Below are positions 42,384 to 58,599 of a stretch of DNA of 64,000 nt, piece by piece. Position numbers and translations under genes: made by a program. The notes beneath the pieces were generated by a model that was not told where the DNA came from, did not search any database, and worked only from the letters and a program-made list of their open reading frames with translations. Every line of letters starts with the position of its first letter. The first letter of the stretch is position 1. The stretch covers positions 124,001 through 188,000 of IMG/VR virus record IMGVR_UViG_3300044213_000107; one strand, 5' to 3'.

Positions 42384-43841
42384 TCATTGCCACTCGGCTT
42401 TTTCTACAGTAAACGGATATTCGGCTTCCGTATAAAATTTCTTGCGTGCAGTCAGATGTCTCTTCGCAAATTTGCAAGTACTTGTGATATCCCAGATTTG
42501 TACAAAGTCCTTGTCCTCCGCTTTCCTAATACCTCGCCCAATTGATTGTATAACCCTGACAAAGCTTTTTCCGGGCTCCACAAGAACCAAATTAAAAATC
42601 CTAGGGATATTAATACCCACAGCGGCCACACCATAAGTCGCCACAATAATCTTATCAGATGACACTGCCACTTCGTCATATTCTTCCTTTCGATCTTTTG
42701 CTTTAGTTGAACCACTTACAAATACTGCTCGATCACCCAGGCGTTCTACTAATAACTTTCCTGTAGCAATACGATCCACCAGAACAAGCGTGTTGCCAGT
42801 TTCATTTACACGGGTGATTAGATTACGCATATAATCTAGTCTGCCATCGGTTTCTAGTAGGTATTTTAATTCTGTTTGATAGTCTCGATATTCAACGTGA
42901 TCGACTAATTGTACTATATTTACATGGCAGTTAGCAAGATGGCCGGCATCCTGAAGATCACTAGCACTTAGTTTTCCCACTACCGGGCCAAGGCTACAAA
43001 ATATACTAACTCGAGCATATTCTTCTTTGGGAATAGTTCCTGTTAGTCCCCAACGTATTGGCACGTGGGCGAACACTCCGGTAAGCAAAACTTTTAATGC
43101 ATCTGCCTTGGCCATGTGCACTTCATCAACAATAACACAAACCACATCTTCAATAAAGTCCCCGATAGTAACATCTGCTTCGTAGTTCTTTGTATTTTTT
43201 AATAATACATTTAGGCTTTGCCAAGTACATATTGTATGAGTATGCCCAAACTCTTTACGGTCTCCGAAATAAACACCGGTGTCAAGACCTAGATTACGAT
43301 AGTCATCTTCAGTTTGTGTTACTAGACTTTTGTTTGGTACGATAACAATGCTACGCCCATATGTTTCTACGCTCCTACTCAGTGCTGCCGTCATAATTGT
43401 TTTACCTGCACCTGTGGCAACTTCCTGGAGGCTCTGGGGATTAGTAAAAAAGTTATTTAGAATAGGAACTTGGTAATCCCTGAGCCAAATAGGTTCCCCG
43501 GCTCGGGGGTGCCCTTTAGGCCAAGTACGGTCAGCAAACATATCTTCTGAGGCTTCAGGGAATTCAAATTTGGTAGAGTATTCACGTAGGTCCTCTACTT
43601 CAATGTCGTAGCCTTCGCTGTCTAGAAAAGTGAGAATGTCCGGGAGTAAGTTAATGTAGGTACTACCACCAAGTTGAAAGAACGCAACTTTACCATCCCA
43701 ACGTCCTAATCGCACACTTGGCTGATATCGCGCTCCAGGGATTTCGTACTTGAATTTGTCCACTAGTTTTTTTCTAGTTGACAATTCTAAGCCTTCTATC
43801 TTTACGTTTACTTCATCTCGTATAATTAGTTTTGCAGTCAT
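42384..43841 (-). CDS. uvsW: SF2 DNA helicase, UvsW-like
   Basis: LRDYQ, ATGAGKT, IVDEVH, GLTGT, ATYGVAAVGINIP, QSIGRGIR. Confidence 0.9.
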   Translation of the reverse strand: MTAKLIIRDEVNVKIEGLELSTRKKLVDKFKYEIPGARYQPSVRLGRWDGKVAFFQLGGSTYINLLPDILTFLDSEGYDIEVEDLREYSTKFEFPEASEDMFADRTWPKGHPRAGEPIWLRDYQVPILNNFFTNPQSLQEVATGAGKTIMTAALSRSVETYGRSIVIVPNKSLVTQTEDDYRNLGLDTGVYFGDRKEFGHTHTICTWQSLNVLLKNTKNYEADVTIGDFIEDVVCVIVDEVHMAKADALKVLLTGVFAHVPIRWGLTGTIPKEEYARVSIFCSLGPVVGKLSASDLQDAGHLANCHVNIVQLVDHVEYRDYQTELKYLLETDGRLDYMRNLITRVNETGNTLVLVDRIATGKLLVERLGDRAVFVSGSTKAKDRKEEYDEVAVSSDKIIVATYGVAAVGINIPRIFNLVLVEPGKSFVRVIQSIGRGIRKAEDKDFVQIWDITSTCKFAKRHLTARKKFYTEAEYPFTVEKAEWQ

Positions 43842-43847
43842 TGATTA

Positions 43848-45008
43848 TTATTTTTTCTTACTAGTATACACATCTTCTGCAAAGAATACAACCTTCTCGG
43901 CACGTTGGAGTAGCAGAGATTTTTCGCCGCCAAACATCATTCCTTGTGTGCTTACCAGCAACGGTATTGTATTTTCCATGTTTACATTATACTTATTCAT
44001 AAACACCAGCTTTTTTTCACCTTTTGGTAAAAATTCTACGACGTCTTTACCCATTCCTGCATCAATAATTTGATCCTGCGGCAACAACGACAATACTGTT
44101 TTCTTAAATGAATCTCTCAGGCTAGGATCATATACATAAATTGGCCAACGGTCAGTAAGGTCAGCATACTCTACGATTTCTTCTAACACAATATTTTCAA
44201 TTTTTGATTTTGTCTTTATATGTCTGTCTACTAGATATCCACTTAGAGATCTGCGTTCTGTTTCTATAGCGTTGTAGATTTCACTGCTAACTGTATAACC
44301 TAGCACACTTGAGTAATCCACTAAACGATATAGATTATCATGAGCAAATCCACCAAGATATTCGTTGATGTATTCGGTCATTGTCACAGGTGCATTTGTA
44401 ATCACACAACCTTGATCTGTTAACTGTAACTCAATTGCATACGGTTCTGCTTCTGCGGTCTGTACTAGTTTATACAAATCCAGAACTTCTTGATCTATAG
44501 TAAACCCATGTCTTTGTGCAATGTCAACAGCAATTATAAGTATAGGTTCTGTTAGGCCAGCAAGCCAGACCTTAAGATTACTGTTCCATTTTAGTGTTCC
44601 ATTTGCTATTTTAGCTGCTTCTTTAAGATCTGTGATTATTTGGTTATTGTAGGAAAATCGTAGATGTAAAAAATTATCTTTTAAGTACAGACTGCGAGTA
44701 CGATCTATTTCCCTGAGTGGCAATCTGTATATTGGACGATTAACAGGTTCAACATCTATGCCTTTTTTTGCCAATTGACGACTATATTTTAATAAAATCT
44801 TGCAGGTTAATTCAGCTTGTCGATCAGTTAGTGGTTGATTGGCTATGGTAGTTTGAGAAACCGTATCGACAAAATTAACATCGTACCTGGCTAGGTTAAC
44901 GATCGGTTCACTGGCAAACATCCATCCCGATTTAACATTGCCCGATACTACGTCCCTGAGTCCGGCTAATACTTCTAAATACTCTTCAACAGTACTAAAT
45001 TGTTTCAT
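43848..45008 (-). CDS. Hypothetical protein (leaderless)
   Basis: 386-aa ORF; TTGACT...TAATAT promoter immediately upstream and no SD. Confidence 0.75.
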   Translation of the reverse strand: MKQFSTVEEYLEVLAGLRDVVSGNVKSGWMFASEPIVNLARYDVNFVDTVSQTTIANQPLTDRQAELTCKILLKYSRQLAKKGIDVEPVNRPIYRLPLREIDRTRSLYLKDNFLHLRFSYNNQIITDLKEAAKIANGTLKWNSNLKVWLAGLTEPILIIAVDIAQRHGFTIDQEVLDLYKLVQTAEAEPYAIELQLTDQGCVITNAPVTMTEYINEYLGGFAHDNLYRLVDYSSVLGYTVSSEIYNAIETERRSLSGYLVDRHIKTKSKIENIVLEEIVEYADLTDRWPIYVYDPSLRDSFKKTVLSLLPQDQIIDAGMGKDVVEFLPKGEKKLVFMNKYNVNMENTIPLLVSTQGMMFGGEKSLLLQRAEKVVFFAEDVYTSKKK

Positions 45009-45042
45009 AGGTGTATATTAACACATTTGTTAAATGCAAGTC

Positions 45043-45068
45043 AAAAAAATCCCTGCCGAAGCAGGGAT
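45043..45068 (-). terminator. Intrinsic terminator with UUCG loop
   Basis: ATCCCTGC-TTCG-GCAGGGAT-TTTTTT. Confidence 0.9.
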
Positions 45069-45071
45069 AAA

Positions 45072-45112
45072 ATATCGCCCAAAGAAAGGAGCTAGAAAAA
45101 CACGGGCGATAT
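45072..45112 (-). ncRNA. Hairpin with an anti-Shine-Dalgarno loop; candidate 3'-UTR sRNA
   Basis: AUAUCGCCC-GUGUUUUUCUAGCUCCUUUCUUU-GGGCGAUAU. Confidence 0.45.
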
Positions 45113-45117
45113 AAAAA

Positions 45118-46149
45118 TTATACTTTCATACAGGTTGTTTGAGCCATTAGTTTCCATTTAATTGGAAAGCTCTTACGCAATTGTGCAACCTTGATTGCCA
45201 TGCGCAAACTCATTTCACGCAATTTATTTTGATTGACTTCCATAAACTCAATCACTTCATCTTGTGCAATCTGCTCTAGGTCCATGTCTGCAAACAATGC
45301 ACCGTCTTGCGCAATCTGCTTGATACGCAAAATCTTATCACGCATTGTATCCAATGTCAAATCAAGATAGTGACAACGGCTTTGTAACGCATCTAAATGA
45401 TCACGAAGTTTTTGACTCTTGAGTCCATCAAACTTGAGATTAGTGATAAAAATCACACTTCCTTTAAACTCAAAACTATCAGGGATGCCTTCTCTACGCA
45501 GGGTAGAGCTTTCTGACAACCAACTAATTTTGCGTTTCTTACCAGAGTCCAATGCACCTTTAAGCAAGTTAAGTGACACGTCATCTAATAAAATGCTATC
45601 ACAGTCGTCAAACACAACTACACAATTGGGATCCGAATACTTGTACAAAGTTTGATACAAACCAATCGGTGTAGCACTACCTTTAACAACTTCTGCACGT
45701 AAACGCTTGCCAGCAATTTGGTCAAACAAACATGCTTTCTCGATGATTTGCTCTACACCAAAACTCTTACCTACTCCAGGAGGACCCGACACAATCATAG
45801 CACGAATTTCGCCATTGGTTGCGGCTTTTGTCATTTCGTCTAGGATCTCAAAACGCTCACGGATACGTGCAATAACTTCTTCGTCGGTTTCAACAGGAGC
45901 AGCCGTATGTGTAGGAGCAACTGCGACTGACGCAGGTACATCGGCACCAGCGACAAACTCATAGTCTGCAGGACTAGAAACTTTAACACGAATCTGCTCA
46001 GGAAAGCCCGGAAAGATACCGCCATTCATAACAGTAACATATCCACCTTTGGCAGTAGATTTGTACTGCTCAACAAGTTGGAATACTAACCCGGAAACAT
46101 CTGTTGTGCGATATGCACCTGAAGTAATACGAATAAATGCGTTTGACAT
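45118..46149 (-). CDS. AAA-family ATPase
   Basis: SGPPGVGKS, VFDDCD, FITN, ALQSR; start reset to MSNAF (AGGAG RBS). Confidence 0.88.
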   Translation of the reverse strand: MSNAFIRITSGAYRTTDVSGLVFQLVEQYKSTAKGGYVTVMNGGIFPGFPEQIRVKVSSPADYEFVAGADVPASVAVAPTHTAAPVETDEEVIARIRERFEILDEMTKAATNGEIRAMIVSGPPGVGKSFGVEQIIEKACLFDQIAGKRLRAEVVKGSATPIGLYQTLYKYSDPNCVVVFDDCDSILLDDVSLNLLKGALDSGKKRKISWLSESSTLRREGIPDSFEFKGSVIFITNLKFDGLKSQKLRDHLDALQSRCHYLDLTLDTMRDKILRIKQIAQDGALFADMDLEQIAQDEVIEFMEVNQNKLREMSLRMAIKVAQLRKSFPIKWKLMAQTTCMKV

Positions 46150-46242
46150 TTCAGCTCCTGTTTTGTTTAATATGTGTATATTATAACATGATTTAAAAAC
46201 CCGAGCAAGCATCGGGTTTTTGAGTGTTGCATTTTTGCAACA
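46150..46242 (-). promoter_or_regulatory. Early regulatory cassette, copy A (palindrome, terminator, sigma70 promoter, leader)
   Basis: TGTTG-N8-CAACA 46225-46242; hairpin 46195-46221; TTGCTC-17-TATAAT. Confidence 0.85.
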
Positions 46243-47645: not shown

Positions 47646-48374
47646 TCAGGTATTTGATTGAACCTGTGGGGCAACGATTGTTTTATCTTTTCGTTTAGTG
47701 CCCGGTCTTTGGAATTTTTTGGGCTTACTGGTTTTGATTTCATTTTCGAGTCCTTCTCCTGTAAATACAGATAGATTTGGTTTAAGTTTTTCTTTAGGTT
47801 TTTTTGGCTCTGCCGAAGTTATCTTGTTAATAATAACTCCAAGTTTCTTAAGAGTTGCGGTTAATTCCTTTTCTCTTAATTTCTTCTTTTCTTCTTTTAA
47901 TCGTTTTTCTTTTGCTTTTGTTTCTTTTTTTCTTCTTCTTTCTTCTTTTAATTTTCGTTTTTTGTCCATTTGATTAAACTTATAATCAAATTTTAATGCA
48001 TCAGCACAGTATATATTCTGTTCTACAATCGGGCGTAAATCTTCTCTACCACATAGCAATCGTTCTCTGCATAAGTCCACATTGTCCTGCATAAGGTCAA
48101 CACCGTAGATGGTAGATAATGCTTCTTCAAAGGTAGCACCATTCTCCATTTTACGGATTAACACTTCGCCAAGGAACTGTCCATCACCACAACTAGGATC
48201 TAAATATGTTTTTGTAGAATCTGTAAACAATTCAGTAGGTAATTGATCTAATATTTCTTGCACAAGCAGAGTGGGGGTAAAGACTTCTCCTGTTGCCTTT
48301 ACCCTTGTTTGTTCTCGCTCAACACCGCCCATGTAAGTGCGATTGCGGATATAGTCAATTACCTTACTTAACAT
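47646..48374 (-). CDS. N6-adenine DNA methyltransferase SAM-binding half with a Lys-rich tail
   Basis: RVKATGEVFTP (motif X), LDPSCGDGQF (motif I), YGVD, ADAL; no NPPY. Confidence 0.8.
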   Translation of the reverse strand: MLSKVIDYIRNRTYMGGVEREQTRVKATGEVFTPTLLVQEILDQLPTELFTDSTKTYLDPSCGDGQFLGEVLIRKMENGATFEEALSTIYGVDLMQDNVDLCRERLLCGREDLRPIVEQNIYCADALKFDYKFNQMDKKRKLKEERRRKKETKAKEKRLKEEKKKLREKELTATLKKLGVIINKITSAEPKKPKEKLKPNLSVFTGEGLENEIKTSKPKKFQRPGTKRKDKTIVAPQVQSNT

Positions 48375-51300
48375 TTGCTTCAATGTAATCAATTTCTTCT
48401 TGTGTTAGGCCAAAGTGAGTATATAGTTCTGCGTCAGTCCAGATCTTACTAGCGAGTTTAGGCAATGATGACAACACTTTTCCATTAAGGAAACCGCTCC
48501 ATTTACCTGTGTTTACGACAAATTTGTAAAGTTTGCTATTAAGATAACTTAGAATATGTTGCGATTCTGCTGAGTTTGTTAAAATATATTGGCATACTTC
48601 TGAGGTTCCTAGATGGCCTTCACTATAGAAAGGTTTAAAATAACCACTTGTAGTCCAAATAATCTTAGACTTTAAAAAGTCTTTTGATTGTTTTTTACAA
48701 AATTTTGTTTGAGCATTAGTATGGAATGTTTCATACTTGTAAGTCGAGTCTTTAGTGTCAGAAAAATTCTTATGCTTATGGTCGCTATGGCACGATGTAT
48801 CGCAAAGAATATCTAACTTGGAGTGAGCTGAGTTAATTACTTTATCATGTATAGGAAATGTTTTAGAGAAATTTCTCGGAAGATATTGGAGTTTAGCAAG
48901 GTCAACTTCTAGTCCGTCAATTAATGCCGTTGAGGTATTCTTATTTTTTTGCATAACCCATGCTGTAAAACTACTACCAACTGTAAAATATTTTCCAACT
49001 TCAGTATCGACCCAAATCAAAGAGTTATCTTTAAACATTTTAAGGACTTGACTGTTTGGGCTCATCCAACTGTCGGGGGTAACAAATGCAATATACCCAT
49101 TTGTGTTGAGTAGTTCGACCCCTTTGTCAACAAACTTACTCCACAAATTATGACTCTTGGGTTGTTTTGTCCCCTTGTCATTGTTACCTTGATAAGGAGG
49201 ATTACCTACTACTACATCAAATTTCATATCAAACTCCAATTCTGTAAAATCGCCTTTCACTACTGTGATGCTAGGGTATTTGCGTTTAATCTGATTGCAG
49301 AAAAAACTGTATTTGTCATTATACACAATCTTGTCTACAATATCAACGCCAAACATATCCACAAGCACGTCAATCTCCGATCCGTGACCACCGGCCGCTA
49401 CAAGTATCTTTTTGCAATGTTTACTTTTAATAAAACGCTTTAGTTCTTTATTATCAAAAATATCAAACCAAAGTTTAGTATCATCTTTAAGAATGGCCAA
49501 GGCATTATTCTCAATATGCTTCTGTTTATTATTATATTTACTCATCCGCACAATCATATCCAGAGTAGAAATTTCTAGTCTAGGTGACAGTCGTTTGATA
49601 GACGCAGGCTTAATTCCGTAAAGTTCTGCAAACTCTCTGCTCATTTCTGCATCAGCATCAATGATGTCCACACACTCAAGGAAACTCTCACCTTGATAAT
49701 TACTCAAAGCCAAGACAGTTGTGGCACTTCCGTTGATCATACGGATTGCTTTTTCTACGATTGCTTTAAGAGGATTTTTTTTTGGACGGCCCGATGCTGT
49801 ATTGCCCGAATCAAAAGTCTTGCCAGTGGCAACGACTTTGTCAATTTTAGATTTCTCTGCCTTGCTTCCAGATGATCGTTTAGCCAATTCGCTAAGGTCT
49901 TCTATCTCTTCCGAAGTCAAATCTTCAATAGTAAGACGAGTATGTGCATTAGCAATTTCTAACAGTTTATTGTTGTCTTCAAACTGATTAATAACTTCTT
50001 CAGCATCAATCCATTGCCCGGAAATCATGTCCTTGATGTTGACGCTATTCATTACTGTCCGTACAGCATCAGGGTAGGTCATACCCTTTTGCCGAATTAG
50101 CAATGCCGCTTCTACTGCTACGCTCATAACAGTATTACGAGTCTTACTTTGATCAAATGCAAAGTCAAAGATGTGACCAAACTTCTTGCCAAAGCCAGGT
50201 GTAAGGCAACGGCTATATTTTTGCATGTAAGGATAGACATCGCCGCCTTCTTGCATAAACAAACAGGCTTGGATCTCAGGAATACTATAACTACGAGTAC
50301 CCATCATATTAGTAATCACTAACAGTTTATCACGTCCCGGATAGTATCCGTTTTGCAAACGCACCAATTCTTCTTTGGTAAGACCTTCGGCTTCTTTGTT
50401 ATCTGTATAATCGCCGTTAAGAATCAACACCTTGTGTTCTGCACAATGCTTCTCAATGATTTCTGCCAAAGCCTCCATTGCCTTTTTAGAGATGTTAACA
50501 AACAACATAAGATTGTTAATAATCTCACCTGCGGCTTGGCTCAGGTTCATTCCGTAGATAGGCTGATACCCTAACAAGTCTTGGAAAACTGCGGCAATAA
50601 ATTTTTCTTGCGAACGAGCCTTTTCGAGGATTTTATTAATGTTTGGCAACACATCCTTGTCAAAGTCTTCCAATAGTTTGTTCATCTTTGGATTAAACAA
50701 CATATTGTAGAATCGACGCACTACTACATTAGGAATGCTCGGATCTTGTTCTACCATACAGTAAGGAACACTAATAATTTCGTCAATGGCATTCTTACCA
50801 AATGCCTTTGCTAGTCGACCAATATTAGTACCACTAGCATTGATCCGTGTTACAGTCTTGTTTGCTAGAATGTATTCAACTTTTTCGACTTGGCTGTCAG
50901 TATGAGTACCAAAGTCTGTTTCCTCTAGCAAGGCAATATGGGTGCCTTGTAGTTGATTAATCCATTCATATTTTTCTTCTACTTCGGGGTTAAGGCTGAT
51001 AAACACAACGGGCATCTTACCATCTGCGATAGCCTGTTGATACTGTTGTTCTGCGTCCGATTCAGCGGCATCGATAAATGTCACGTCAGCGAAGTCAACG
51101 TATTTAGAAACTTCGTCTTTGTATGATGTTTTAACACTAAGACCGACACCGTAGGCCATGATAAACATAGACTCGTGGCCAAATTCTTCTCGCATGTTTT
51201 TTGCAAGAGACAGGAACAAGATAGTTTTACCAATTCGGGCAGCAAGTTCGCAGACAAAATTAGTTACAACTCCATTTTGTCGAAGAGCAGACAATACCTT

Positions 51301-51786
51301 TTTAATAACAAGAATCTGAATATCTCGTAAATTTACAGCCTGCTTTTCATGATCGGGGTTAAGTTTTGCGGCACACCTGCGGATTTTCTCATTGAGCCAA
51401 ACACGTATGGGTTCAAAATCTTTTGACTTAACAAAATCCTCAATAAAATATTTTTCTACTGCAATCTTAAACAATTCTGAATGGCGATTAGAATCAGGGC
51501 GAGGCAATTGAGCGGCAATAGATTGACGAACTATTTCATGCAAAGCATGATCACGATATCCGGGTTCAGGAATCGTATCTAGCAAATACTTTTGCCAAGA
51601 AACATTTTTAGAACTAGAAAGACTTAATTGTCGTTCGGCAATAGTGCCTTCAACTGTATCACCGATACCAAACTGTAAGAAACCAGTAGACACCATCGCG
51701 TCAATCCAAGTTTCTTCAGTCATTACGTAGATACCTGTAGTGTCAGTTGCAAGACCAAATTCTACAGGACTTTTAACGTAACTCAT
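48364..51786 (-). CDS. SF2-helicase-like plus N6-adenine methyltransferase plus target-recognition fusion (Type IIG/ISP-like)
   Basis: AARIGKT, LLEETD, MQKYSR; VKGDF, DVVVGNPPY; Eco57I-like C-terminus ending FGLTQEEIDYI; start reset to MSYVK. Confidence 0.8.
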   Translation of the reverse strand: MSYVKSPVEFGLATDTTGIYVMTEETWIDAMVSTGFLQFGIGDTVEGTIAERQLSLSSSKNVSWQKYLLDTIPEPGYRDHALHEIVRQSIAAQLPRPDSNRHSELFKIAVEKYFIEDFVKSKDFEPIRVWLNEKIRRCAAKLNPDHEKQAVNLRDIQILVIKKVLSALRQNGVVTNFVCELAARIGKTILFLSLAKNMREEFGHESMFIMAYGVGLSVKTSYKDEVSKYVDFADVTFIDAAESDAEQQYQQAIADGKMPVVFISLNPEVEEKYEWINQLQGTHIALLEETDFGTHTDSQVEKVEYILANKTVTRINASGTNIGRLAKAFGKNAIDEIISVPYCMVEQDPSIPNVVVRRFYNMLFNPKMNKLLEDFDKDVLPNINKILEKARSQEKFIAAVFQDLLGYQPIYGMNLSQAAGEIINNLMLFVNISKKAMEALAEIIEKHCAEHKVLILNGDYTDNKEAEGLTKEELVRLQNGYYPGRDKLLVITNMMGTRSYSIPEIQACLFMQEGGDVYPYMQKYSRCLTPGFGKKFGHIFDFAFDQSKTRNTVMSVAVEAALLIRQKGMTYPDAVRTVMNSVNIKDMISGQWIDAEEVINQFEDNNKLLEIANAHTRLTIEDLTSEEIEDLSELAKRSSGSKAEKSKIDKVVATGKTFDSGNTASGRPKKNPLKAIVEKAIRMINGSATTVLALSNYQGESFLECVDIIDADAEMSREFAELYGIKPASIKRLSPRLEISTLDMIVRMSKYNNKQKHIENNALAILKDDTKLWFDIFDNKELKRFIKSKHCKKILVAAGGHGSEIDVLVDMFGVDIVDKIVYNDKYSFFCNQIKRKYPSITVVKGDFTELEFDMKFDVVVGNPPYQGNNDKGTKQPKSHNLWSKFVDKGVELLNTNGYIAFVTPDSWMSPNSQVLKMFKDNSLIWVDTEVGKYFTVGSSFTAWVMQKNKNTSTALIDGLEVDLAKLQYLPRNFSKTFPIHDKVINSAHSKLDILCDTSCHSDHKHKNFSDTKDSTYKYETFHTNAQTKFCKKQSKDFLKSKIIWTTSGYFKPFYSEGHLGTSEVCQYILTNSAESQHILSYLNSKLYKFVVNTGKWSGFLNGKVLSSLPKLASKIWTDAELYTHFGLTQEEIDYIEANVK

Positions 51787-51958
51787 CTTCATCTCCAAAA
51801 TCTGCAGAATCAATTTGATCTTGCCAGTATACACGAGCCTCGGCTTCATTGTCAAAGGTTTCCAACACCTTCATTCCACCAAGAGGATGCGGAAACCACA
51901 CCAAGAATTTTCCGCTGTCCTCATCTTGTGTACAGTACAATTCTACCGGTTCGTTCAT
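51773..51958 (-). CDS. Small acidic early protein
   Basis: 61 aa directly downstream of a consensus promoter. Confidence 0.65.
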   Translation of the reverse strand: MNEPVELYCTQDEDSGKFLVWFPHPLGGMKVLETFDNEAEARVYWQDQIDSADFGDEDELR

Positions 51959-52050
51959 ACAACCACCGCTTTCGTTAATATGTGTATATTATAACACCAA
52001 AAGAAAACCCTGTCAAACACAGGGTTTTTGGGTGTTGTACAAAAACAACA
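51959..52050 (-). promoter_or_regulatory. Early regulatory cassette, copy C
   Basis: TGTTG-N8-CAACA 52033-52050; hairpin; perfect TTGACA-17-TATAAT. Confidence 0.9.
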
Positions 52051-52821
52051 CTAGAAATACTGGCAATTTGTGCGTGGAAAAAAGCACTCATTTTGGCGCA
52101 AAGGCTTTCCCTTCCAAGTTTCGCAAATTGCGGCTTTTCCAAGTCCCATGGCCAAACTATAAACAAAATTTTGATTTGCCATTACCAAATTTGCACCTGC
52201 AACAATGCCAGCAAGTTCTAAAAAGTCTGCTACCGGGCGATACTCAATCGCCACACCCACGGTCTGGACAAACTCTGCATGCTCGGCCGGGCTGCCTACA
52301 AATATGCCGTTGGCGCCAAGATCACCATCGGCCACAATTTCACGCCATAGAGCATCACCGTTTGGATCTCGATAACGTGCAGTTCTTGAGACCACAATTG
52401 GTTGAGTTTCAATTGGGTCTGCTTCCAACCAAGGTGTATCATAGTCCTGCATGGCAAATGGCAAACCAAAAGTACGGTGATATGCCTCCACATAGTTGCC
52501 TTCAAAGCCTCGCCACAGCACACCTCTAAAACGATCCAGATCCACATCGGGTTCTGACATGCCGGTTCTCCAATCGCCAAAGCTCTGAATATATGATTGT
52601 CGCCGCAACAAAGGTACTAACTGATAGTAATCTTGTTCTGTGAGACGTCCTCGATGTGCTGGATCAACTTCGTCGGGACGATATCCATACTGGCTTACAC
52701 AATTTTCAATGTTGTTTAATGCCACTAGAAACATGGCATTGTTTTCTGCTGCCATTTTTTTTACTACAGAGAGAGAATAAATCAAGTCTCCCAAGGTTCC
52801 TGAGTGCCGATAAGTTGTCAT
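52051..52821 (-). CDS. GT9 (heptosyltransferase)-like glycosyltransferase
   Basis: HSGTLGDLIYSL, DFLELAGIVAGANLVMANQ..YSLA.GLGK; start reset (ATGA overlap). Confidence 0.6.
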   Translation of the reverse strand: MTTYRHSGTLGDLIYSLSVVKKMAAENNAMFLVALNNIENCVSQYGYRPDEVDPAHRGRLTEQDYYQLVPLLRRQSYIQSFGDWRTGMSEPDVDLDRFRGVLWRGFEGNYVEAYHRTFGLPFAMQDYDTPWLEADPIETQPIVVSRTARYRDPNGDALWREIVADGDLGANGIFVGSPAEHAEFVQTVGVAIEYRPVADFLELAGIVAGANLVMANQNFVYSLAMGLGKAAICETWKGKPLRQNECFFPRTNCQYF

Positions 52822-53372
52822 GGTTTTGTATACTTCCAAAGTCCAAGATGTGGGTTGATGTCTGCATCAGGCAACAGTTCTGCAACTGCTTGTTTCACTC
52901 CAGGCCATGCCCAATCATCACCGGCCAACATACTGCCAGGTTTGACTTTCTGGAGCCACTTTGTGATGTCGTTGACAACATCTTCATACTCGTGACTGCC
53001 GTCAATCAATACAAAGTCTAAACTATTGTCGGCGTATTGTTCGACTGCTGCCATGCTAGATAAACGAACAGGATGCAGAATATGGCTTAGGCTTCGTGTG
53101 TTAGTTAAAAACTCATCATAAAGCGTATCATTGACCACTGCAGGATCTTGTTGATGAACATCTTCTGCCAAGCTGCCTTTCCATGTATCTACACAATCAA
53201 CACGAATGTTTTTTCCACTATTAGCAATTACTACTCCAAGATAACAACTGCTTCGTCCGCGCCAGGATCCTATTTCAACAAAGTGTGCTGTGTCTGGCGC
53301 TAGTTGTACCGCAGCGTCGTATATAGATTCGTAGTTAAACCAGCCTTGTATGTTTTGATAAAAATGTTCCAT
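52818..53372 (-). CDS. Class I SAM methyltransferase (Methyltransf_24-like)
   Basis: VEIGSWRGRS, FVLIDGSH.Y..V..DI..W..KVKPG..LAGDD. Confidence 0.88.
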   Translation of the reverse strand: MEHFYQNIQGWFNYESIYDAAVQLAPDTAHFVEIGSWRGRSSCYLGVVIANSGKNIRVDCVDTWKGSLAEDVHQQDPAVVNDTLYDEFLTNTRSLSHILHPVRLSSMAAVEQYADNSLDFVLIDGSHEYEDVVNDITKWLQKVKPGSMLAGDDWAWPGVKQAVAELLPDADINPHLGLWKYTKP

Positions 53373-54247
53373 TATAGTACCTTTAAAATTTCTTCGGTTA
53401 TTTTTGCAGTATCAAAGTTATTATTGCAAGGTGTGTTGCCTTTACTGCATACTAAATGACTCACTGGACGCTGTTGATGATCATTACAACCACGACAATC
53501 TTCTAGCGTTTGTACGGCAACACCACGGGATCCTGGAGGTAGTATTACTTCGGGGCGCAGATGTGTAAGTAGTGCAATAATCTGTGTACCACTGGCAGCT
53601 GCACACCAGTATGGTCCCGAGTCTATACCCGCAAAGGCTCGGGCACCGTTGCATAGCCACATTAGTTCTTGATTGTTAAATCGTGCACGTGCATCAACAA
53701 ATAAAGGATGATCAACAAAATTATCAGTCTGACCGCCAACACACACAACCTTAAAGTCAGCACGTTCTTCAAACAGTTTTGTAAATACATCTAACCAAAC
53801 CGCCATTGTAATGTTTTTAGCAGTCCAGTGCCAGTTACGCATGTGCACAACAATATATCTATCAAGTTCATTTTCATAACAAAAATTCAATACACGTGTT
53901 TTATCTTCGTCGCCGGGAAACAACTCAATCTGTGGAATTAAAGTGTTTGCGCCAAACGCACGGAACATATAGCTCGAAAGATAATTTTCAGTTGGATTTA
54001 ACTCATAGGCATTATCTAAATTTATAAACAAGTCCCAGCGATCAACGTCAGGCACCTGGTTAACAGGGAAAATATTTCTAATATGTGGGTTGTTGCGATA
54101 TACTTCAGCAAAGTCTGTAGCAATATCAATATTTGCGTTAGATCCATATCTGGTTTTTAATTCACGTACAACCGCCGTGCTCATAATAACATCACCGATA
54201 GCGGCACGTCGTTGTACTAATATATTAATAGGTTGTTCTAATTTCAT
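53372..54247 (-). CDS. Glycosyltransferase family 9-like
   Basis: RRAAIGDVIMST, FAGIDSGP..CAAA. Confidence 0.85.
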   Translation of the reverse strand: MKLEQPINILVQRRAAIGDVIMSTAVVRELKTRYGSNANIDIATDFAEVYRNNPHIRNIFPVNQVPDVDRWDLFINLDNAYELNPTENYLSSYMFRAFGANTLIPQIELFPGDEDKTRVLNFCYENELDRYIVVHMRNWHWTAKNITMAVWLDVFTKLFEERADFKVVCVGGQTDNFVDHPLFVDARARFNNQELMWLCNGARAFAGIDSGPYWCAAASGTQIIALLTHLRPEVILPPGSRGVAVQTLEDCRGCNDHQQRPVSHLVCSKGNTPCNNNFDTAKITEEILKVL

Positions 54248-55296
54248 CTGTCAAGTGCTTGTGCAATTAAATTGGTAAATTCGTGATCGGGTCTTTGCCG
54301 TAATAATAAATTCTTGTTATGTTGCAGAATAGGCATTGATTGTTGATACGCAGACTTTATAACAGATTTTGGTTGTTGTAAAAACGCTAACATACTTTGT
54401 GTAAATCTAAATAATCGTTCAGCATTGTCTTCAATGTCATCATAACTTTCGTCAATTATACTACTAAATGTAATATAACCCAAACTTCTTAGATACCGTA
54501 ATGAATAAGCAGGGCCCAGATACATAAACAATTGGTAATAGTGAATGGCATTAAAAACTTTTTCACTTAAAAATACACCAGTGTCGTAGAATGTATCTGT
54601 AATTATGCCTAGATAACTGTCAAGATAAAACTTTCTAGGAGTTTGGTAAAACTCAATGGTATCATCTAATGGTGGTAATGGCACACGATTTTGTATGGTG
54701 TTGCAGGTTTCAATGATATGGCTGTGTGCAGACTCGGGAAAACGAGCAATTAAAAAATCACTGGGTATACGACTGACCACGCATTTGTAATTTACTAGAT
54801 TGTCTTTTATCAAATCATTTTTTATAAGATTGGCTAAAATATATCTGCGTGGATAAAGATCTTTGCTGCTGGCCCAATAAAACTTGTGCGGTCTTTCTAC
54901 AGGAAAGTCTTGCCAATTGGTATATGATGATTGATTAACATACTCTTGCCAGTGTAGTGTACTAACATAATCAAATATCAACATTCTGTAGTAAGGAAAT
55001 TTTGGTTTGACGGTTATGCGAAAATCATCACCAGTTAATCTTCCGTTGAATACGATTATGGGATTTGGTCTTGCAGAATAAAAATCATTTATTGGCTTAA
55101 ACCAATGATCGTATTCTTCTAGATTTTGAAACAGGCCCATGAACACAATCAGTGTGTGATCGTTGGCAATTGACGCTTCAACTTCGGGCATAAAATCCCA
55201 CATGTATTCGGTGTGTTGTGTAAAGAATTTATGTACAACAAAATTATCTGTGGGTATTTCTAATCTAAGTTCATACTCACCAGTATTGTAAATCAT
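54244..55296 (-). CDS. Putative glycosyltransferase (GT10-like SEK motif)
   Basis: IITDT..FLSEKV..AI...LRSLGY.TF..IDESYD. Confidence 0.5.
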   Translation of the reverse strand: MIYNTGEYELRLEIPTDNFVVHKFFTQHTEYMWDFMPEVEASIANDHTLIVFMGLFQNLEEYDHWFKPINDFYSARPNPIIVFNGRLTGDDFRITVKPKFPYYRMLIFDYVSTLHWQEYVNQSSYTNWQDFPVERPHKFYWASSKDLYPRRYILANLIKNDLIKDNLVNYKCVVSRIPSDFLIARFPESAHSHIIETCNTIQNRVPLPPLDDTIEFYQTPRKFYLDSYLGIITDTFYDTGVFLSEKVFNAIHYYQLFMYLGPAYSLRYLRSLGYITFSSIIDESYDDIEDNAERLFRFTQSMLAFLQQPKSVIKSAYQQSMPILQHNKNLLLRQRPDHEFTNLIAQALDR

Positions 55297-55652
55297 TGGC
55301 TTGCGTGGTCCTGTTTTATTTCACGCACAGGGTCATTGAGTATTTCAGCGATGGCATTTTTATATCTAACACGATAATTATTAATATCTCTTATTTCTAG
55401 CGCACGGCGTCCTATCTCAGCAAGATCAACTCCGTCTAAACGACATTTTTTAAAATCGTCTTCGAGATTCCAAATACTAAAATGAATACGTTCTAGTTCA
55501 TATAAATTATCTTGTATTAGCTCTATTGGCAATTTATCGATTTCAGTTTGATAAAAATCCAATTCTGCTTGATTTGCTCCATTGGTTTTTGTGTGCTTTA
55601 CACGAGCAATGGTATACCTATCAACTAATTCAATTACCGGGAACTTGAACAT
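55293..55652 (-). CDS. Helical hypothetical protein typical of glycan loci (DUF6165-like, from memory)
   Basis: ELVDRYTI...IWNLED...A..I...N..R...KN pattern. Confidence 0.55.
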   Translation of the reverse strand: MFKFPVIELVDRYTIARVKHTKTNGANQAELDFYQTEIDKLPIELIQDNLYELERIHFSIWNLEDDFKKCRLDGVDLAEIGRRALEIRDINNYRVRYKNAIAEILNDPVREIKQDHASQ

Positions 55653-56856
55653 CTATAGTGGCCTTTGGAAAATATTTTACAAATACATCATTTGCATTGT
55701 TTCTACGTTCTAGAATCCTGCGTTTAATTTCTGTATAAAAATTCCAAGCAAGTGGCACAAATGCTATTCGATCATTATTTGTAAAACTATCTAGGTATTC
55801 TGATCCCACAATAAGACATTTTTGTCCCGGAGTATAGTGTCCTTGTTTAAGTGGATTATCGTCGACAACACAGTCTAATGGAAATTTAATATAGTTCAAT
55901 ACAGTATTGCCTTTGGCAGCTGCGCCATAACCAACTAGATGATAGCCCTGCGACTTTAAATCTTGTAAAGTGTTTGTTAATACCGTCATGTTTTCTTTGA
56001 CTTCTTGGGCCCATTGATGATAGTAGTCTGCAGATAACAACCCTAGTTCACATTCGCGAGCAATTAAGTTTTCGATGCGAGCAGGATTTCCACGTTCGTG
56101 GCTTATAACAAATATATAACTTGTTCCATGTATTGGTGTTTTTTGCACATCAACTAGGTGCATACCTGCTCTTTTACAAAGCTCATGCATGCTGTTGATA
56201 TTGTAAAAATTTACATGCTCATGGTATATTGTATCAAATTCACCGTTTGGTACCATATCTGCTTGGCTTGTCTGTACAAAAAACAAGCCGCCGGGTGCTA
56301 GTAAAGGTCGAAGTGCTTGCAAATACTCCAACGGAGCAGGATTATGTGCAAAACTGTTTTGTGCGACAATTATGTCAAACTTTTGATCAATTGTTTTTGC
56401 TAGATCTGGGCCAAAAAAATCACACCAGACCTGATGGTTTGCACTACTCGACGGGTAAAGATTTTCAGCAGGGTCTATGCCATATGTGTTTAAGCCTAAT
56501 TTTTTAAAAGCATTTAACTGGCTACCATCGTTGCAGCCAATATCAAGCACATTACCGGGCCAATGGTGAATGTATTCACGAGCAAATCTAGCAAACCATT
56601 CCATGTAGTCAAGATATGTTTTGGTTGTACCACTAACATACAGATAATTTTTGTAGATAATCTCGGGATCAACTACATGTGTTAGTTGTAGATGAAAGCA
56701 ATGACTGCACCTATTAACTGCCAGTGGATAAGAGCTTTCAGTGTCATCTTTGTTGACGTAATTATTTGCTAATGGTTGGTCTGTTAGATCTAATGTTAAT
56801 TCTAAATCTTCTGAGCCACAAGCAAGACATTCATTTAATTCCGTTAATGTGTTCAT
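55630..56856 (-). CDS. NDP-hexose C-methyltransferase family protein
   Basis: Zn-binding CLACG..C..C, LDIGCNDG, YHEHVNFY, GYGAAAKG; start reset to MNTLT. Confidence 0.88.
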   Translation of the reverse strand: MNTLTELNECLACGSEDLELTLDLTDQPLANNYVNKDDTESSYPLAVNRCSHCFHLQLTHVVDPEIIYKNYLYVSGTTKTYLDYMEWFARFAREYIHHWPGNVLDIGCNDGSQLNAFKKLGLNTYGIDPAENLYPSSSANHQVWCDFFGPDLAKTIDQKFDIIVAQNSFAHNPAPLEYLQALRPLLAPGGLFFVQTSQADMVPNGEFDTIYHEHVNFYNINSMHELCKRAGMHLVDVQKTPIHGTSYIFVISHERGNPARIENLIARECELGLLSADYYHQWAQEVKENMTVLTNTLQDLKSQGYHLVGYGAAAKGNTVLNYIKFPLDCVVDDNPLKQGHYTPGQKCLIVGSEYLDSFTNNDRIAFVPLAWNFYTEIKRRILERRNNANDVFVKYFPKATIDVQVPGN

Positions 56857-56857
56857 A

Positions 56858-57568
56858 TTAGTTTTTAATAGCAGCTCCGTTGGGAGCAATGGCACCTTCT
56901 ACGCCAAGTAAAGGTACTTCTTGTACATGTTCGGCGTTTAAAAAACGATATAGTACATGTTCAATGTCAGTGTATCCACCTTGCGCAACACGTTCGGCAA
57001 AAAAGTTTAAACTATCATCATATACTTGAATGATTTCTTCTGTTAGTGCAGTGGGCCATGACCAAAGTCTAGCCATATACTGTGCTGCAGTTTGTGTTAC
57101 TTCAAAAGGAAACTGGCTTTTATATTTTGGCCCAATAACTATTTTTGAGTTATCGTCATACAAGGACAAATTAAAATCACTGTTTAACAAGTATCTACCA
57201 GACATTTTGTGTATGCGGTCAACATCTGCAAAATCGCCGTCATCTTGACATTGCCTAATGGTCCTACCAAAACACATAATCTCAGTGGAGTTTTTTACTA
57301 CATCCCAGTTGTCTGTTCCGTTATAGATTGATTGCACTGCAGCATCTGTAGTATAGTCAATGAACACATCACTGTTATCTTCTAATATTTGGCTTTGTTC
57401 GTCGGTTAACGGTACTCCAGTGCATTCCATAATCACTATCTTGCTACCAGGAGCATGTTGATGTATGCTCTGAATAGTTGCCAGTGTTTGTACCAAACGT
57501 TCTTCGGGCGTGTATACCCCAAATCTGCTGTTAATAGCAGAAGTTACAATAAAACAATGTCGTGTCAT
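56858..57568 (-). CDS. Putative glycan-related protein (GT-like)
   Basis: FIVTSAI..., HKMSGRY; located in the cluster. Confidence 0.55.
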   Translation of the reverse strand: MTRHCFIVTSAINSRFGVYTPEERLVQTLATIQSIHQHAPGSKIVIMECTGVPLTDEQSQILEDNSDVFIDYTTDAAVQSIYNGTDNWDVVKNSTEIMCFGRTIRQCQDDGDFADVDRIHKMSGRYLLNSDFNLSLYDDNSKIVIGPKYKSQFPFEVTQTAAQYMARLWSWPTALTEEIIQVYDDSLNFFAERVAQGGYTDIEHVLYRFLNAEHVQEVPLLGVEGAIAPNGAAIKN

Positions 57569-58599
57569 TTGCTTAACCACCTATCATTAGCAAGAGTCCA
57601 ACGAACTACTTCTTCGATTCTATCGCTGAGTTTAATCTTTGGCTCCCACCCTAGCGATTTTAACAGTCCGCCATCTAACGCATATCGTAAATCATGCCCG
57701 GGACGTGATCCGTGGAAGTCTACCATTTCATAGTTTAACACACGGTCCTGCGCACGAGCAATCATTTGTGCTAGGGTTAGGTTATCAATTTCTTCTGTGC
57801 CTACTAGGTTAAATTTAGGACAATGTGCATGCCCATAATCACCTTGGTGTTTGTAGTCTTTAAGACTTAAAATAAACATTAAACCTTCAGCAACATCCCG
57901 AGCATGAATATACATGCGTGTGCCAGCGTGTCTACGTGTAGGATCGGCATGAATAAACACCTTTTCGCCGTCTCTTGCACGTTGGATAACCATTGGGATA
58001 AATTTTTCTGGATGTTGACGTTCGCCAAACACATTCATTGTATGTGTTACCACAATTGGCATCTTGTATGTGTTTTCGTAGGCTACACAAAATTCCTCTG
58101 CGGCTGCTTTACTTGCTGAATAAGGGTTTGTGCTGTTATAGCGATCGTATTCTTTATACGAAACACCCGGAGGTGCTACACCAAAGATCTCATCTGTAGA
58201 GAAATATACAAATCGTTCTAGGTCAGGCAAATGTCGACGTGCGTAATCTAACATGTTTACAGTACCAACTACGTTGTCTTGCACAAACTCCATAGGGTAT
58301 TGGATGCTACGATCAACGTGCGATCCTGCAGCTAGATGTAAAATAATATCAACTGCACCAATTTGTTTTACAATCATTTCATTAAGCTCGGCTTTGAGAT
58401 CATGAAATACAATCCGTAGTCTACCAGCAACTTCTGCAGGGTCATGTTCTTGTAGCATGTCGTGTAGTCGGTTTAGGTTTCCGCTGATATCTAATCGATC
58501 CAAACATACAATATTCCAGTCTGTGTCTCTTAAGATCTTATCAATAACATGGTGCGCAATAAAACCGGCACCGCCAGTAATCAATACATTTTTTGTCAT
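57565..58599 (-). CDS. NDP-glucose 4,6-dehydratase (RmlB-like)
   Basis: GGAGFI, HLAAGSHVDRS, STDE, YSASK, RPGHDLRYA. Confidence 0.92.
   Translation of the reverse strand: MTKNVLITGGAGFIAHHVIDKILRDTDWNIVCLDRLDISGNLNRLHDMLQEHDPAEVAGRLRIVFHDLKAELNEMIVKQIGAVDIILHLAAGSHVDRSIQYPMEFVQDNVVGTVNMLDYARRHLPDLERFVYFSTDEIFGVAPPGVSYKEYDRYNSTNPYSASKAAAEEFCVAYENTYKMPIVVTHTMNVFGERQHPEKFIPMVIQRARDGEKVFIHADPTRRHAGTRMYIHARDVAEGLMFILSLKDYKHQGDYGHAHCPKFNLVGTEEIDNLTLAQMIARAQDRVLNYEMVDFHGSRPGHDLRYALDGGLLKSLGWEPKIKLSDRIEEVVRWTLANDRWLSK

What the first reader, a model, noticed from the sequence alone, without database searches (positions are those of the whole stretch)
47646..51786. Phage RM-like system with an apparently bipartite methyltransferase
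Seen: the ~1140-aa protein has degenerate SF2 motifs (AARIGKT, EETD), a degenerate SAM motif I (LVAAGGHG), an intact NPPY and a recognition-domain-like tail. The overlapping downstream ORF has intact motifs X, I, II and III but no NPPY, plus a ~110-aa Lys/Arg-rich tail. Known: gamma-class N6-MTases carry X-I...IV-TRD in one chain, and Type ISP/IIG enzymes fuse motor and MTase. Inference: the two chains complement each other or one regulates the other; the consensus early promoter suggests genome protection, host DNA attack or exclusion of competing phages.
Basis: partly seen in the sequence, partly recalled or inferred. Interest (0 to 1): 0.6.

Follow-up and report, generated by a model that had tools for sequence, protein, structure and literature searches.

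The report
Phage restriction-methylase fusion with half-methylase partner
A large freshwater phage carries a single-chain, motor-driven restriction-modification-like enzyme followed by a tiny, extremely conserved 'front half' of a DNA methyltransferase. In related phages that front half is the separate cofactor-binding subunit of a methylase split into two genes.

Summary
Window 51786-48364 (-) encodes a 1140-aa protein and 48374-47646 (-) a 242-aa protein, overlapping by 11 nt.

The large protein has the Type ISP layout: SF2 ATPase, helical coupler, and a complete M.TaqI-like gamma N6A-methyltransferase plus TRD. Its N-terminal domain is not Mrr. It is related to T5orf172, a GIY-YIG-superfamily nuclease domain (hhalign 89%). 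The 'degenerate' motifs (GKT, EETD, AGGHGSE, NPPY) are conserved in 36 homologues, so they are family variants, not decay.

The small protein is only motifs X-I-II-III, plus a variable Lys-rich tail.
- In about 72 of 80 related viral loci it abuts a methylase gene of the same C-half family.
- In several loci that gene is a C-half-only ORF starting at the Met before NPPY.
- In Aeromonas phage 65.2 the halves are fused in beta-class order.

So the small protein is best read as a trans-acting SAM-binding half.

In this locus the large protein already has its own N-half. I propose an internal start (GGAG, 6 nt, ATG at 49227) that would yield a 287-aa C-half/TRD partner. This start is supported statistically but unproven. 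The complex prediction gave no verdict.

Verdict: a new variant of known kinds.

The parts
51988..52016 (-). Perfect sigma-70-type promoter TTGACA-17-TATAAT with TG extension. A hairpin at 52028-52004 overlaps its -35 element.
   Evidence: It is one of 11 perfect sites in the 260.7-kb genome, all on the - strand, against 0.4 expected.
51773..51958 (-). orf61: a 61-aa acidic leader gene that overlaps the start of the large gene. It is a conserved companion of the nuclease-helicase unit.
   Evidence: Homologues (40-75% identity) occur in 16 related loci, always directly upstream of the nuclease-helicase gene. No PHROG match.
48364..51786 (-). Large gene, 1140 aa: T5orf172-like domain, SF2 ATPase, coupler, gamma-class N6A methyltransferase and TRD (a Type ISP-like single chain).
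   Evidence: AF2 model pLDDT 82. Foldseek and VIA-align results.
51412..51786 (-). N-terminal domain (aa 1-125). It is T5orf172/GIY-YIG-like, with invariant G18-I-Y20, G42, R52 and E104, and H83 in at least 90% of sequences.
   Evidence: Alignment A3. hhalign against T5orf172 N-domains gives Prob 89%, E 2e-6. Two of 36 members hit Pfam T5orf172 at E 0.006 or weaker. GIY-YIG nucleases appear among weak structural matches at Z 2.8-3.3.
49987..51339 (-). SF2 helicase-like ATPase (aa ~150-600). Walker A AARIGKT is at 51243-51223 and the EETD box at 50925-50914.
   Evidence: VIA-align Z about 20-21 to RadD and Snf2h and about 19 to RIG-I. GKT and EExD are invariant.
49417..49986 (-). Helical coupler-like region (aa ~601-790).
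   Evidence: Helices in the model. LlaGI aligns across model residues 153-1115.
49222..49416 (-). The methylase's own N-half (strands beta1-beta3), with variant motif I LVAAGGHG at 49404-49381.
   Evidence: In distant homologues it is the best-conserved segment of the protein.
48364..49227 (-). C-half (NPPY at 49203-49192) plus TRD. It is a swappable specificity cassette and a proposed nested 287-aa ORF starting at ATG 49227-49225.
   Evidence: Mosaic identity break at this point. C-half-only genes in relatives start at the same Met. Sequence.
49234..49237 (-). GGAG located 6 nt upstream of the internal ATG: a putative internal ribosome-binding site.
   Evidence: Enrichment statistics. Codon usage.
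47970..48374 (-). Small gene, conserved domain (aa 1-135): motifs X, I (48200-48174), II and III of an N6A methylase. It ends just after motif III.
   Evidence: It is 36% identical to the C-terminal module of the beta-order Aeromonas phage 65.2 protein.
47646..47969 (-). Small gene tail: 108 aa, Lys/Glu/Arg-rich, plus the stop codon.
   Evidence: It varies in length and is absent in relatives.

Best explanation
This is a three-gene early operon, orf61 - large - small, in an uncultured freshwater jumbo myovirus.

The large protein is a single-chain, ATP-driven restriction-modification-type enzyme built like Type ISP enzymes. It has four parts:
- a T5orf172 (GIY-YIG superfamily)-like nuclease domain in place of Mrr;
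- an SF2 translocase and a coupler;
- a complete M.TaqI-like gamma N6-adenine methyltransferase;
- a TRD.

The segment from the Met just before NPPY to the C-terminus (C-half plus TRD) behaves as an exchangeable specificity cassette.

The small protein is the free-standing SAM-binding half (motifs X-III) of a split amino-methyltransferase. In related phages it is the only N-half available to C-half/TRD polypeptides, and it is arranged in beta-class order (IV-TRD | X-I-III).

In this locus I infer two further steps. Ribosomes also start at the internal GGAG-N6-ATG (49227), giving a 287-aa C-half/TRD polypeptide. That polypeptide then assembles with the small protein into a stand-alone modification methylase with the same specificity as the restriction enzyme, which would protect phage DNA.

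Shown: domain architecture, motif conservation, synteny, the fused and split relatives, the mosaic breakpoint, and the enrichment of ribosome-binding-site-like sequence.

Inferred: nuclease and ATPase activity, internal initiation, physical assembly, and biological role.
For: Architecture:
- Foldseek's top hits are LlaBIII and LlaGI, E 2.5e-21.
- LlaGI scores Z 18.5 with 638 residues aligned, model 153-1115.
- M.TaqI 20-410 aligns to model 765-1115 at Z 23.9.
- RadD and Snf2 score Z about 20 on residues 150-610.
- Motifs are invariant in 36 homologues.

N-terminal domain:
- hhalign to T5orf172 domains gives Prob 89%, E 2e-6, with GIY / VGxT / R / H / ExF in register.
- Sister single-chain T5orf172+ResIII+Eco57I proteins of 1154 and 1195 aa exist.
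- The same orf61 leader precedes both N-domain types.
- T5orf172 belongs to the GIY-YIG superfamily and is the domain of ICP1 Gp88, which that paper characterises as an origin-directed nuclease (PMC8263062).

Small protein as a split-methylase half:
- The first 135 aa are extremely conserved, and more than 5500 homologues were found.
- About 72 of 80 viral loci have it abutting a methylase gene of the same C-half family.
- C-half-only genes start at the pre-NPPY Met in L034, L063, L081, L083 and L006.
- Two to four methylase or C-half genes can precede one small gene, as in L042, L053 and L072.
- The fused beta-order Aeromonas phage 65.2 protein ends exactly where the small domain ends.

Cassette: identity drops from about 90% to about 35%/19% exactly at NPPY in P0020 and others, and the reverse pattern is seen in P0007.

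Internal start:
- GGAG lies 6 nt before ATG 49227.
- An SD-like motif precedes this Met in 24 of 49 unique contexts, against 162 of 2826 other internal Mets (Fisher 1e-16).
- Synonymous-codon resampling expects 8.3 +/- 2.2.
- GGAG is kept in the ELEF, KMEF and TTEF contexts although GAG, TTG and ACG are minor codons (17%, 19%, 5%).
Against: - The large protein already has a complete Rossmann fold, and its own N-half is the best-conserved segment. It may therefore methylate alone.
- L015's methylase has a canonical motif I yet keeps the small gene, so the small protein's role is not simply to replace a dead motif I.
- The N-terminal domain has no significant match in Pfam or the PDB for this protein itself. 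The GIY-YIG link rests on one profile-profile hit at 89% and on motif register.
- The contexts used for the ribosome-binding-site statistic are phylogenetically related. The motif could also be a relic of an ancestral gene start.
- No expression, proteomic or methylome data exist; no RNA run holds the locus.
Confidence: 0.55

Rival explanations
1. The large protein is a self-sufficient Type ISP-like enzyme. The small protein is an accessory or regulatory subunit that binds the full-length enzyme or DNA, for example as a SAM sensor or a timing switch between modification and restriction. It does not complete any catalytic fold.
For: The large protein has a complete M.TaqI-like fold. The small gene persists next to a canonical methylase in L015. 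SAM-contact motifs are strictly conserved in the small protein. This copy has a basic tail.
Against: Half a Rossmann fold is unlikely to be stable alone. Relatives in which the only N-half is the small protein, and the fused Aeromonas form, show that the module can act as a structural half of a methylase. The tail is not conserved.
Confidence: 0.2
2. The system is not restrictive. The large protein is a translocating 'protective' methylase or anti-defence factor, its N-terminal domain only binds DNA, and the cluster serves to methylate phage DNA against host restriction enzymes.
For: Relatives carry arrays of 2-4 methylase genes with different TRDs, which is typical of phage self-protection. 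The N-domain has no direct nuclease-family hit.
Against: The residues invariant or nearly so (Y20, R52, H83, E104) align with those conserved in T5orf172 domains. An SF2 motor fused to a site-specific methylase and a nuclease-type domain is the hallmark of ATP-dependent restriction enzymes (PMC4666363; PMC4738411).
Confidence: 0.15
3. The small gene is a leftover of a truncated second methylase gene, or of a beta-order ancestor, and has no current function in this phage.
For: It lacks motif IV and all later motifs. The large protein looks complete.
Against: The 135-aa domain keeps 59-75% identity to this copy across 22 aligned relatives, and 55 of its columns are invariant. More than 5500 homologues of about 155-200 aa exist. 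It stays more similar than its large partner even where the partner's first ~850 aa are unalignable, as in L013 and L015. Start-stop overlap is maintained.
Confidence: 0.05
4. The small protein is a decoy. As a free methylase N-half it poisons host Type I, BREX or other methylase complexes, or sequesters SAM.
For: All the Atlas's nearest clusters shown are at least 98% viral by their taxon records. SAM-binding motifs are intact. The operon has an early promoter.
Against: This does not explain why the gene sits at the 3' end of a phage methylase gene of one particular C-half family in about 90% of loci. It also does not explain the fused form.
Confidence: 0.05

Closest known systems
[quoted passage not shown]
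   Same: A single polypeptide with nuclease, SF2 helicase-like ATPase, coupler, gamma N6A methyltransferase and TRD in the same order (PMC4666363). It is the best whole-chain structural match.
   Different: The N-terminal domain is T5orf172/GIY-YIG-like, not Mrr/PD-(D/E)xK. The protein is about 430 aa shorter and is 11-14% identical to these chains. The Walker B box is EETD. It is encoded by a lytic-type jumbo phage, not a plasmid defence locus. It has two conserved companions, orf61 and the half-methylase.
M.TaqI / Eco57I-family gamma-class N6-adenine methyltransferases
   Same: Fold and TRD match: Z 23.9 over 328 residues, covering M.TaqI 20-410. NPPY is present, and Pfam Eco57I hits at E 2.5e-16.
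   Different: Motif I is AGGHGSE rather than the FxGxG type, and motif X is DDP rather than TP. The domain is embedded in a motor protein.
T5orf172-SF2 helicase proteins and T5orf172+ResIII+Eco57I fusions (metagenomic; Pfam PF10544)
   Same: The position in the operon is the same, with the same orf61 leader, the same downstream methylase C-half family and the same small gene. The N-domains align at 89% hhalign probability.
   Different: Pfam's T5orf172 model does not detect the window's domain. The helicase parts are not alignable by HMMER.
Beta-class amino-methyltransferases (order IV-TRD-I), such as Aeromonas phage 65.2 APU01675.1
   Same: The gene order C-half/TRD then X-I-II-III reproduces the beta order (PMC7544214). 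The small protein is 36% identical to the C-terminal module of the 386-aa Aeromonas protein, and both end at motif III.
   Different: Here the two halves are separate polypeptides, and the upstream chain also carries its own gamma-type N-half.
Natural two-polypeptide C5 methyltransferases M.AquI and M.EcoHK31I
   Same: They set a precedent for a DNA methyltransferase assembled from two gene products (PMC3404938).
   Different: Those are cytosine-5 enzymes split near the TRD or motif IX. Here the break is between motifs III and IV of an N6A-type enzyme, at the beta1/beta4 switch point.

Membership tests
Type ISP R-M enzymes | Single chain with an SF2 helicase-like ATPase followed by a coupler, a gamma N6A methylase and a TRD | tested here: met
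   LlaGI aligns over model 153-1115 (Z 18.5, 638 residues). LlaBIII is the Foldseek top hit.
Type ISP R-M enzymes | N-terminal Mrr-family PD-(D/E)xK nuclease | tested here: not met
   No PD-(D/E)xK pattern is evident among the conserved residues (by eye), and no Mrr match was found in Pfam or among the structural hits. The domain aligns to T5orf172 instead.
Type ISP R-M enzymes | ATP-driven translocation and collision-dependent cleavage; hemimethylation of an asymmetric site | not testable with these tools
   This needs biochemistry.
Gamma-class N6A methyltransferase (M.TaqI-like, Pfam Eco57I) | Order X-I-II-III-IV...TRD in one chain with NPPY | tested here: met
   Strands beta1-beta4 precede NPPY. 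Whole-M.TaqI superposition. Pfam Eco57I 60.7 bits against a cut-off of 25.3.
Gamma-class N6A methyltransferase (M.TaqI-like, Pfam Eco57I) | Canonical SAM motif I (FxGxG type) | tested here: inconclusive
   The motif is AGGHGSE: a Gly-rich loop is kept, but the acidic and aromatic positions are changed. It is conserved across the family. SAM binding was not tested.
T5orf172 / GIY-YIG superfamily nuclease domain | GIY...[YIG]...R...H/Y...E motif set on a beta-beta-alpha-alpha-beta-alpha core | tested here: inconclusive
   Motifs are invariant or nearly so and in register with T5orf172 (hhalign 89%, E 2e-6). Two of 36 members hit PF10544 weakly. Structural matches to I-TevI, Slx1 and HIGLE reach only Z 2.8-3.3. 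PF10544 and PF01541 do not hit this protein.
Split (two-chain) beta-order amino-methyltransferase | A free N-half with motifs X, I, II and III and nothing beyond | tested here: met
Split (two-chain) beta-order amino-methyltransferase | A partner polypeptide that starts at beta4/motif IV and lacks its own N-half | tested here: inconclusive
   Such genes exist in relatives (L034, L063, L081, L083, L006). In this window only a nested ORF with GGAG-N6-ATG could supply one. Only one C-half of this family is in the genome.
Split (two-chain) beta-order amino-methyltransferase | Physical assembly and activity of the two chains | not testable with these tools
   This needs co-expression and reconstitution. 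The one complex prediction gave no verdict, so it is not counted.
BREX PglX / Type IIG (MmeI-like) enzymes | Full-length match to PglX or IIG models; no helicase domain | tested here: not met
   NCBIfam BREX_1_MTaseX scores 29.5 bits against a cut-off of 500, over the NPPY region only. PADLOC PglX and IIG hits cover about 60-100 residues.

The most novel reading that the evidence does not exclude
Phages run a modular, natural 'split methyltransferase' system. One nearly invariant SAM-binding half-subunit would serve any number of interchangeable catalytic/TRD cassettes, including one produced by internal translation initiation inside a restriction-enzyme gene. A single swappable cassette would then set the specificity of both the restriction enzyme and its protective methylase at once.
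Probability: 0.35. Interest if true: 0.8.

Novelty: new variant of a known kind. Interest (0 to 1): 0.62.

Why it matters
If the small protein really is a shared, trans-acting cofactor half, it would be a natural two-chain N6-adenine methyltransferase split at the beta1/beta4 switch point. That would be a living intermediate between the gamma and beta motif orders, which have so far been explained by hypothetical circular permutation.

It would also explain a very abundant family of viral 'N6_Mtase fragment' genes (more than 5500 clusters) that are currently annotated as hypothetical or as methylases.

A nested start would couple restriction and modification specificity through one recombining cassette. 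That offers a neat route for phages to change specificity without self-killing.

Practically, a compact SAM half plus exchangeable TRD cassettes is an attractive scaffold for programmable split methylases. The GIY-YIG-type Type ISP-like enzymes would widen the known range of ATP-dependent restriction enzymes, here carried by lytic jumbo phages rather than by hosts.

Tried and rejected
- Complex prediction of large residues 600-1140 with small residues 1-140: no verdict (ipSAE 0.00 in both runs, controls not run). It counts neither for nor against binding.
- Foldseek PDB search with the isolated N-terminal domain: nothing at E below 0.06. The MarR-type rows are noise.
- VIA-align wide search: best Z 4.0, not significant.
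- PDB sequence-profile search with the N-domain: only chance histone H2B rows at E above 0.08.
- Pfam scan of distant N-domain homologues: no nuclease family found.
- Exhaustive profile search with the N-domain: only 21 clusters, all within this family, so there is no bridge to a named family by HMMER alone.
- Megablast of the locus against the phage collection: no match.
- Programmed frameshift fusing large and small: rejected, because the overlap or gap differs among relatives (11, 4 and 23 nt overlaps, small gaps elsewhere).
- 'The small protein compensates a dead motif I': rejected as the sole explanation, because L015's methylase has a canonical DPACGRG motif and still has the small gene.
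- The Lys/Arg tail as a defining feature: rejected.
- Glu-codon bias in the five codons before the internal Met (33% GAG against a 24% background): not convincing on its own.
- Literature searches for a described split N6A phage methylase: nothing specific found. This is not proof of absence.
- Read laying was not used, because no RNA run holds the locus.

Full report
CONTEXT. The window is bases 124001-188000 of a 260,723-bp single-contig virus record with 38.5% GC. CheckV rates the record 74% complete. It encodes a T4-type Gp23 capsid protein. Its RadD-like helicase is closest, at 50-56% identity, to those of the jumbo phages Phosso, Atu_ph07 and PA5oct. The locus occurs in freshwater metagenomes from 12 studies, and no RNA run holds it. 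Almost all genes between 36 and 60 kb of the window lie on the - strand.

OBSERVATION.
- The large ORF is open from a TTG at 51855. The ATG at 51786 has a GGAG 6 nt upstream and matches the 1140-aa form found in databases.
- The small ORF's ATG is at 48374, giving 242 aa, and overlaps the large stop codon by 11 nt.
- Pfam finds Eco57I (E 2.5e-16) and a weak ResIII hit in the large protein. In the small protein it finds only the first third of N6_Mtase.
- One PADLOC Type II methylase model covers large 808-1144 with its positions 64-409, and small 18-82 with its positions 27-91.
- The promoter at 52016-51988 is a perfect extended-10 sigma-70 consensus. It belongs to a set of 11 perfect sites, all on the gene strand, against 0.4 expected. 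'Early, host-polymerase-read' is therefore a fair inference.

THE LARGE PROTEIN. More than 180 full-length homologues exist in metagenomes.
- In 36 homologues spanning 39-91% identity, the following are invariant or nearly so: GKT, EExD, an SGT motif III, arginines in the second RecA lobe, AGGHGSE, the motif II Asp, and NPPY. The 'degenerate' motifs are therefore conserved family variants.
- The AF2 model has pLDDT 82. Its best whole-chain matches are the Type ISP enzymes LlaBIII and LlaGI (Foldseek E 2.5e-21; VIA-align Z 18.5 with 638 residues aligned, model 153-1115 against LlaGI 178-1437).
- Residues 150-610 match RadD, Snf2 and RIG-I-type motors at Z about 20.
- Residues 765-1115 superpose on essentially all of M.TaqI (20-410) at Z 23.9. 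The chain therefore contains a complete gamma-class methylase with its own beta1-beta3 half and a TaqI-like TRD.

THE N-TERMINAL DOMAIN. Type ISP enzymes carry an Mrr nuclease here (PMC4666363), but this protein does not.
- The first 125 residues have invariant G-I-Y20, G42, R52 and E104, and the Gly of F-G-[IV]-G and H83 in at least 90% of sequences.
- HMMER-level searches stay inside the family: 21 clusters among 1.84 billion proteins.
- Fold searches are not significant. Even so, four GIY-YIG nuclease structures (HIGLE, Slx1 twice, I-TevI) appear among the top 50 of 48,161 chains, all starting at model residue 15-16.
- The decisive lead came from synteny. In locus L015 the same operon position holds a 696-aa protein with Pfam T5orf172 plus ResIII. 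Single-chain T5orf172+ResIII+Eco57I proteins of 1154 and 1195 aa also exist.
- A profile-profile comparison of the two N-domain alignments gives 89% probability and E 2e-6 over 139 columns. GIY, VGxT, R (+10), H (+31) and ExF are in register.
- T5orf172 belongs to the GIY-YIG superfamily and is the domain of ICP1 Gp88, which that paper characterises as an origin-directed nuclease (PMC8263062). It is also listed among R-M nuclease domains (PMC4738411).
- I therefore read the domain as a probable GIY-YIG-type nuclease, with membership marked inconclusive.

THE SMALL PROTEIN. Its first 135 residues carry motifs X (GEVFTP), I (DPSCGDGQF), II (YGVDLM) and III (CADAL), and the conserved part stops there.
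- This domain is extraordinarily conserved: 59-75% identity across 22 relatives, with 55 invariant columns. The Lys/Glu/Arg tail varies in length and is absent in close relatives.
- More than 5500 homologues of mostly 155-200 aa exist, and the nearest Atlas clusters shown are at least 98% viral.

THE SMALL PROTEIN'S GENOMIC CONTEXT. I fetched 80 viral loci with the small gene.
- In about 72 of them, a methylase ORF of the same C-half family ends at or overlaps the small gene's start.
- That upstream gene comes in three forms: fused motor-methylases of about 1140-1360 aa, ordinary methylases of about 350-435 aa, and C-half-only genes. The C-half-only genes begin at the Met just before beta4/NPPY and have no N-half at all (L034, L063, L081, L083, and L006 in a 484-kb phage).
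- Some loci have two to four methylase or C-half genes with different TRDs followed by a single small gene (L042, L053, L062, L072).
- In Aeromonas phage 65.2 a 386-aa protein starts at NPPY and ends with an X-I-II-III module. That module is 36% identical to the small protein and stops at the same residue. This is the beta-class order IV-TRD-I (PMC7544214).
- Together, a Rosetta-stone fusion, obligate split pairs and near-universal adjacency make the small protein a trans-acting SAM-binding half of a split methylase.

WHAT THAT MEANS IN THIS LOCUS. The large protein already has an N-half, and that N-half is its best-conserved segment in distant homologues. L015's methylase has a canonical motif I and still keeps the small gene. 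Two observations suggest another solution.
- First, identity between homologues is mosaic, with the break exactly at MKFDVVxGNPPYQ. P0020 is 88-92% identical up to residue 855 and 35%/19% after it, while P0007 shows the reverse pattern. C-half plus TRD is thus an exchangeable cassette with the same boundaries as the free-standing C-half genes.
- Second, the conserved Met at that boundary (ATG 49227-49225) is preceded by GGAG at a 6-nt spacing.
  - Across related loci this Met, when internal, has a Shine-Dalgarno-like motif in 24 of 49 unique contexts, against 162 of 2826 other internal Mets (Fisher 1e-16).
  - Resampling synonymous codons while keeping the amino acids expects 8.3 +/- 2.2.
  - GGAG is kept in the ELEF, KMEF and TTEF contexts using minor codons (GAG 17%, TTG 19%, ACG 5%).
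  - The contexts are related by descent, so the P values are inflated. The signal nevertheless persists after collapsing the fused family to a single observation.

I therefore propose a nested 287-aa C-half/TRD product that pairs with the small protein. This would give a stand-alone modification enzyme with the same specificity as the restriction enzyme. It is an inference: no more than one C-half of this family exists in the genome, and no expression data are available.

COMPANION GENE. A 61-aa acidic ORF (51958-51773) overlaps the large gene's start. Homologues precede the nuclease-helicase gene in 16 related loci, whether that gene is fused, split, or of the sister T5orf172 type. Its function is unknown. 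It has no PHROG match.

ROLE. A site-specific methylase with a TRD cassette that recombines, joined to a motor and a nuclease-type domain and transcribed from a consensus early promoter, fits a phage-borne restriction-modification weapon. Cassette diversification argues for targets that can acquire matching methylation, namely rival phages or mobile elements. It argues less for simple host DNA breakdown. This is inference only. A purely protective methylation role is the main alternative.

NOVELTY. The parts are known kinds: the Type ISP layout, the M.TaqI-like methylase, T5orf172 nuclease domains in R-M contexts, and two-chain C5 methylases (PMC3404938). What I could not find described is twofold. 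One is a natural N6A-type methylase split between motifs III and IV, with a shared and nearly invariant N-half subunit. The other is its coupling to a Type ISP-like phage enzyme through a possible nested start. Hence 'new variant of a known kind'.

Noticed in passing
window 51773-51958 (-): A 61-aa acidic ORF overlaps the large gene's start. Homologues (40-75% identity) sit directly upstream of the nuclease-helicase gene in 16 related loci of three different architectures. It may be a regulator or inhibitor of the nuclease unit.
   Followed up: partly
whole genome G000; in the window at 52016-51988 (-): There are eleven perfect TTGACA-N16-18-TATAAT sites, all on the - strand, against 0.4 expected. 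Three of them share a TTGACAGGG -35 region. At the window copy a hairpin/terminator-like stem (52028-52004) overlaps the -35.
   Followed up: partly
L072 2970-6474; L042, L053, L062: Tandem arrays of 2-4 methylase or C-half genes with different TRDs are followed by a single small N-half gene. L063 also carries short C-half/TRD fragments upstream of its C-half-only gene, which look like spare cassettes.
   Followed up: partly
alignment A1 (homologues of window 48364-51786): Evolution is mosaic. The N-terminal domain, the motor-coupler-N-half block and the C-half/TRD cassette have uncoupled identities between homologues, implying recombination breakpoints near residue 150 and at NPPY.
   Followed up: partly
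window 52818-57580 (-): Directly upstream lies a cluster of sugar-type genes: Methyltransf_24, a GT9-like glycosyltransferase, a C-methyltransferase with a zinc-binding N-domain, and a DapB_N-like reductase. Whether it modifies DNA or a surface glycan is unknown.
   Followed up: no
window 42384-46212 (-): A RadD-like SF2 helicase (485 aa) and an AAA+ clamp-loader-like protein lie downstream. A helicase of the same size (about 483-485 aa, same Pfam families) also follows the methylase module in cyanophage ACG-2014f, L001 and L015.
   Followed up: no
window 10722-10988 (-): A small stand-alone GIY-YIG (PF01541, E 8.8e-6) gene, probably a homing-endonuclease-like element.
   Followed up: no
L001 1874-5937: In a 356-kb relative, three separate N6_N4_Mtase genes lie immediately upstream of the large gene, so that phage stacks several methylases at this locus.
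   Followed up: no
L004 (Synechococcus phage ACG-2014f) 5986-9933: This cultured T4-like cyanophage has the same trio in loose form: a 134-aa half-methylase (gp051), a 393-aa Eco57I-type methylase lacking a GxG motif I (gp053), and a helicase (gp054). gp051 is annotated as hypothetical.
   Followed up: partly
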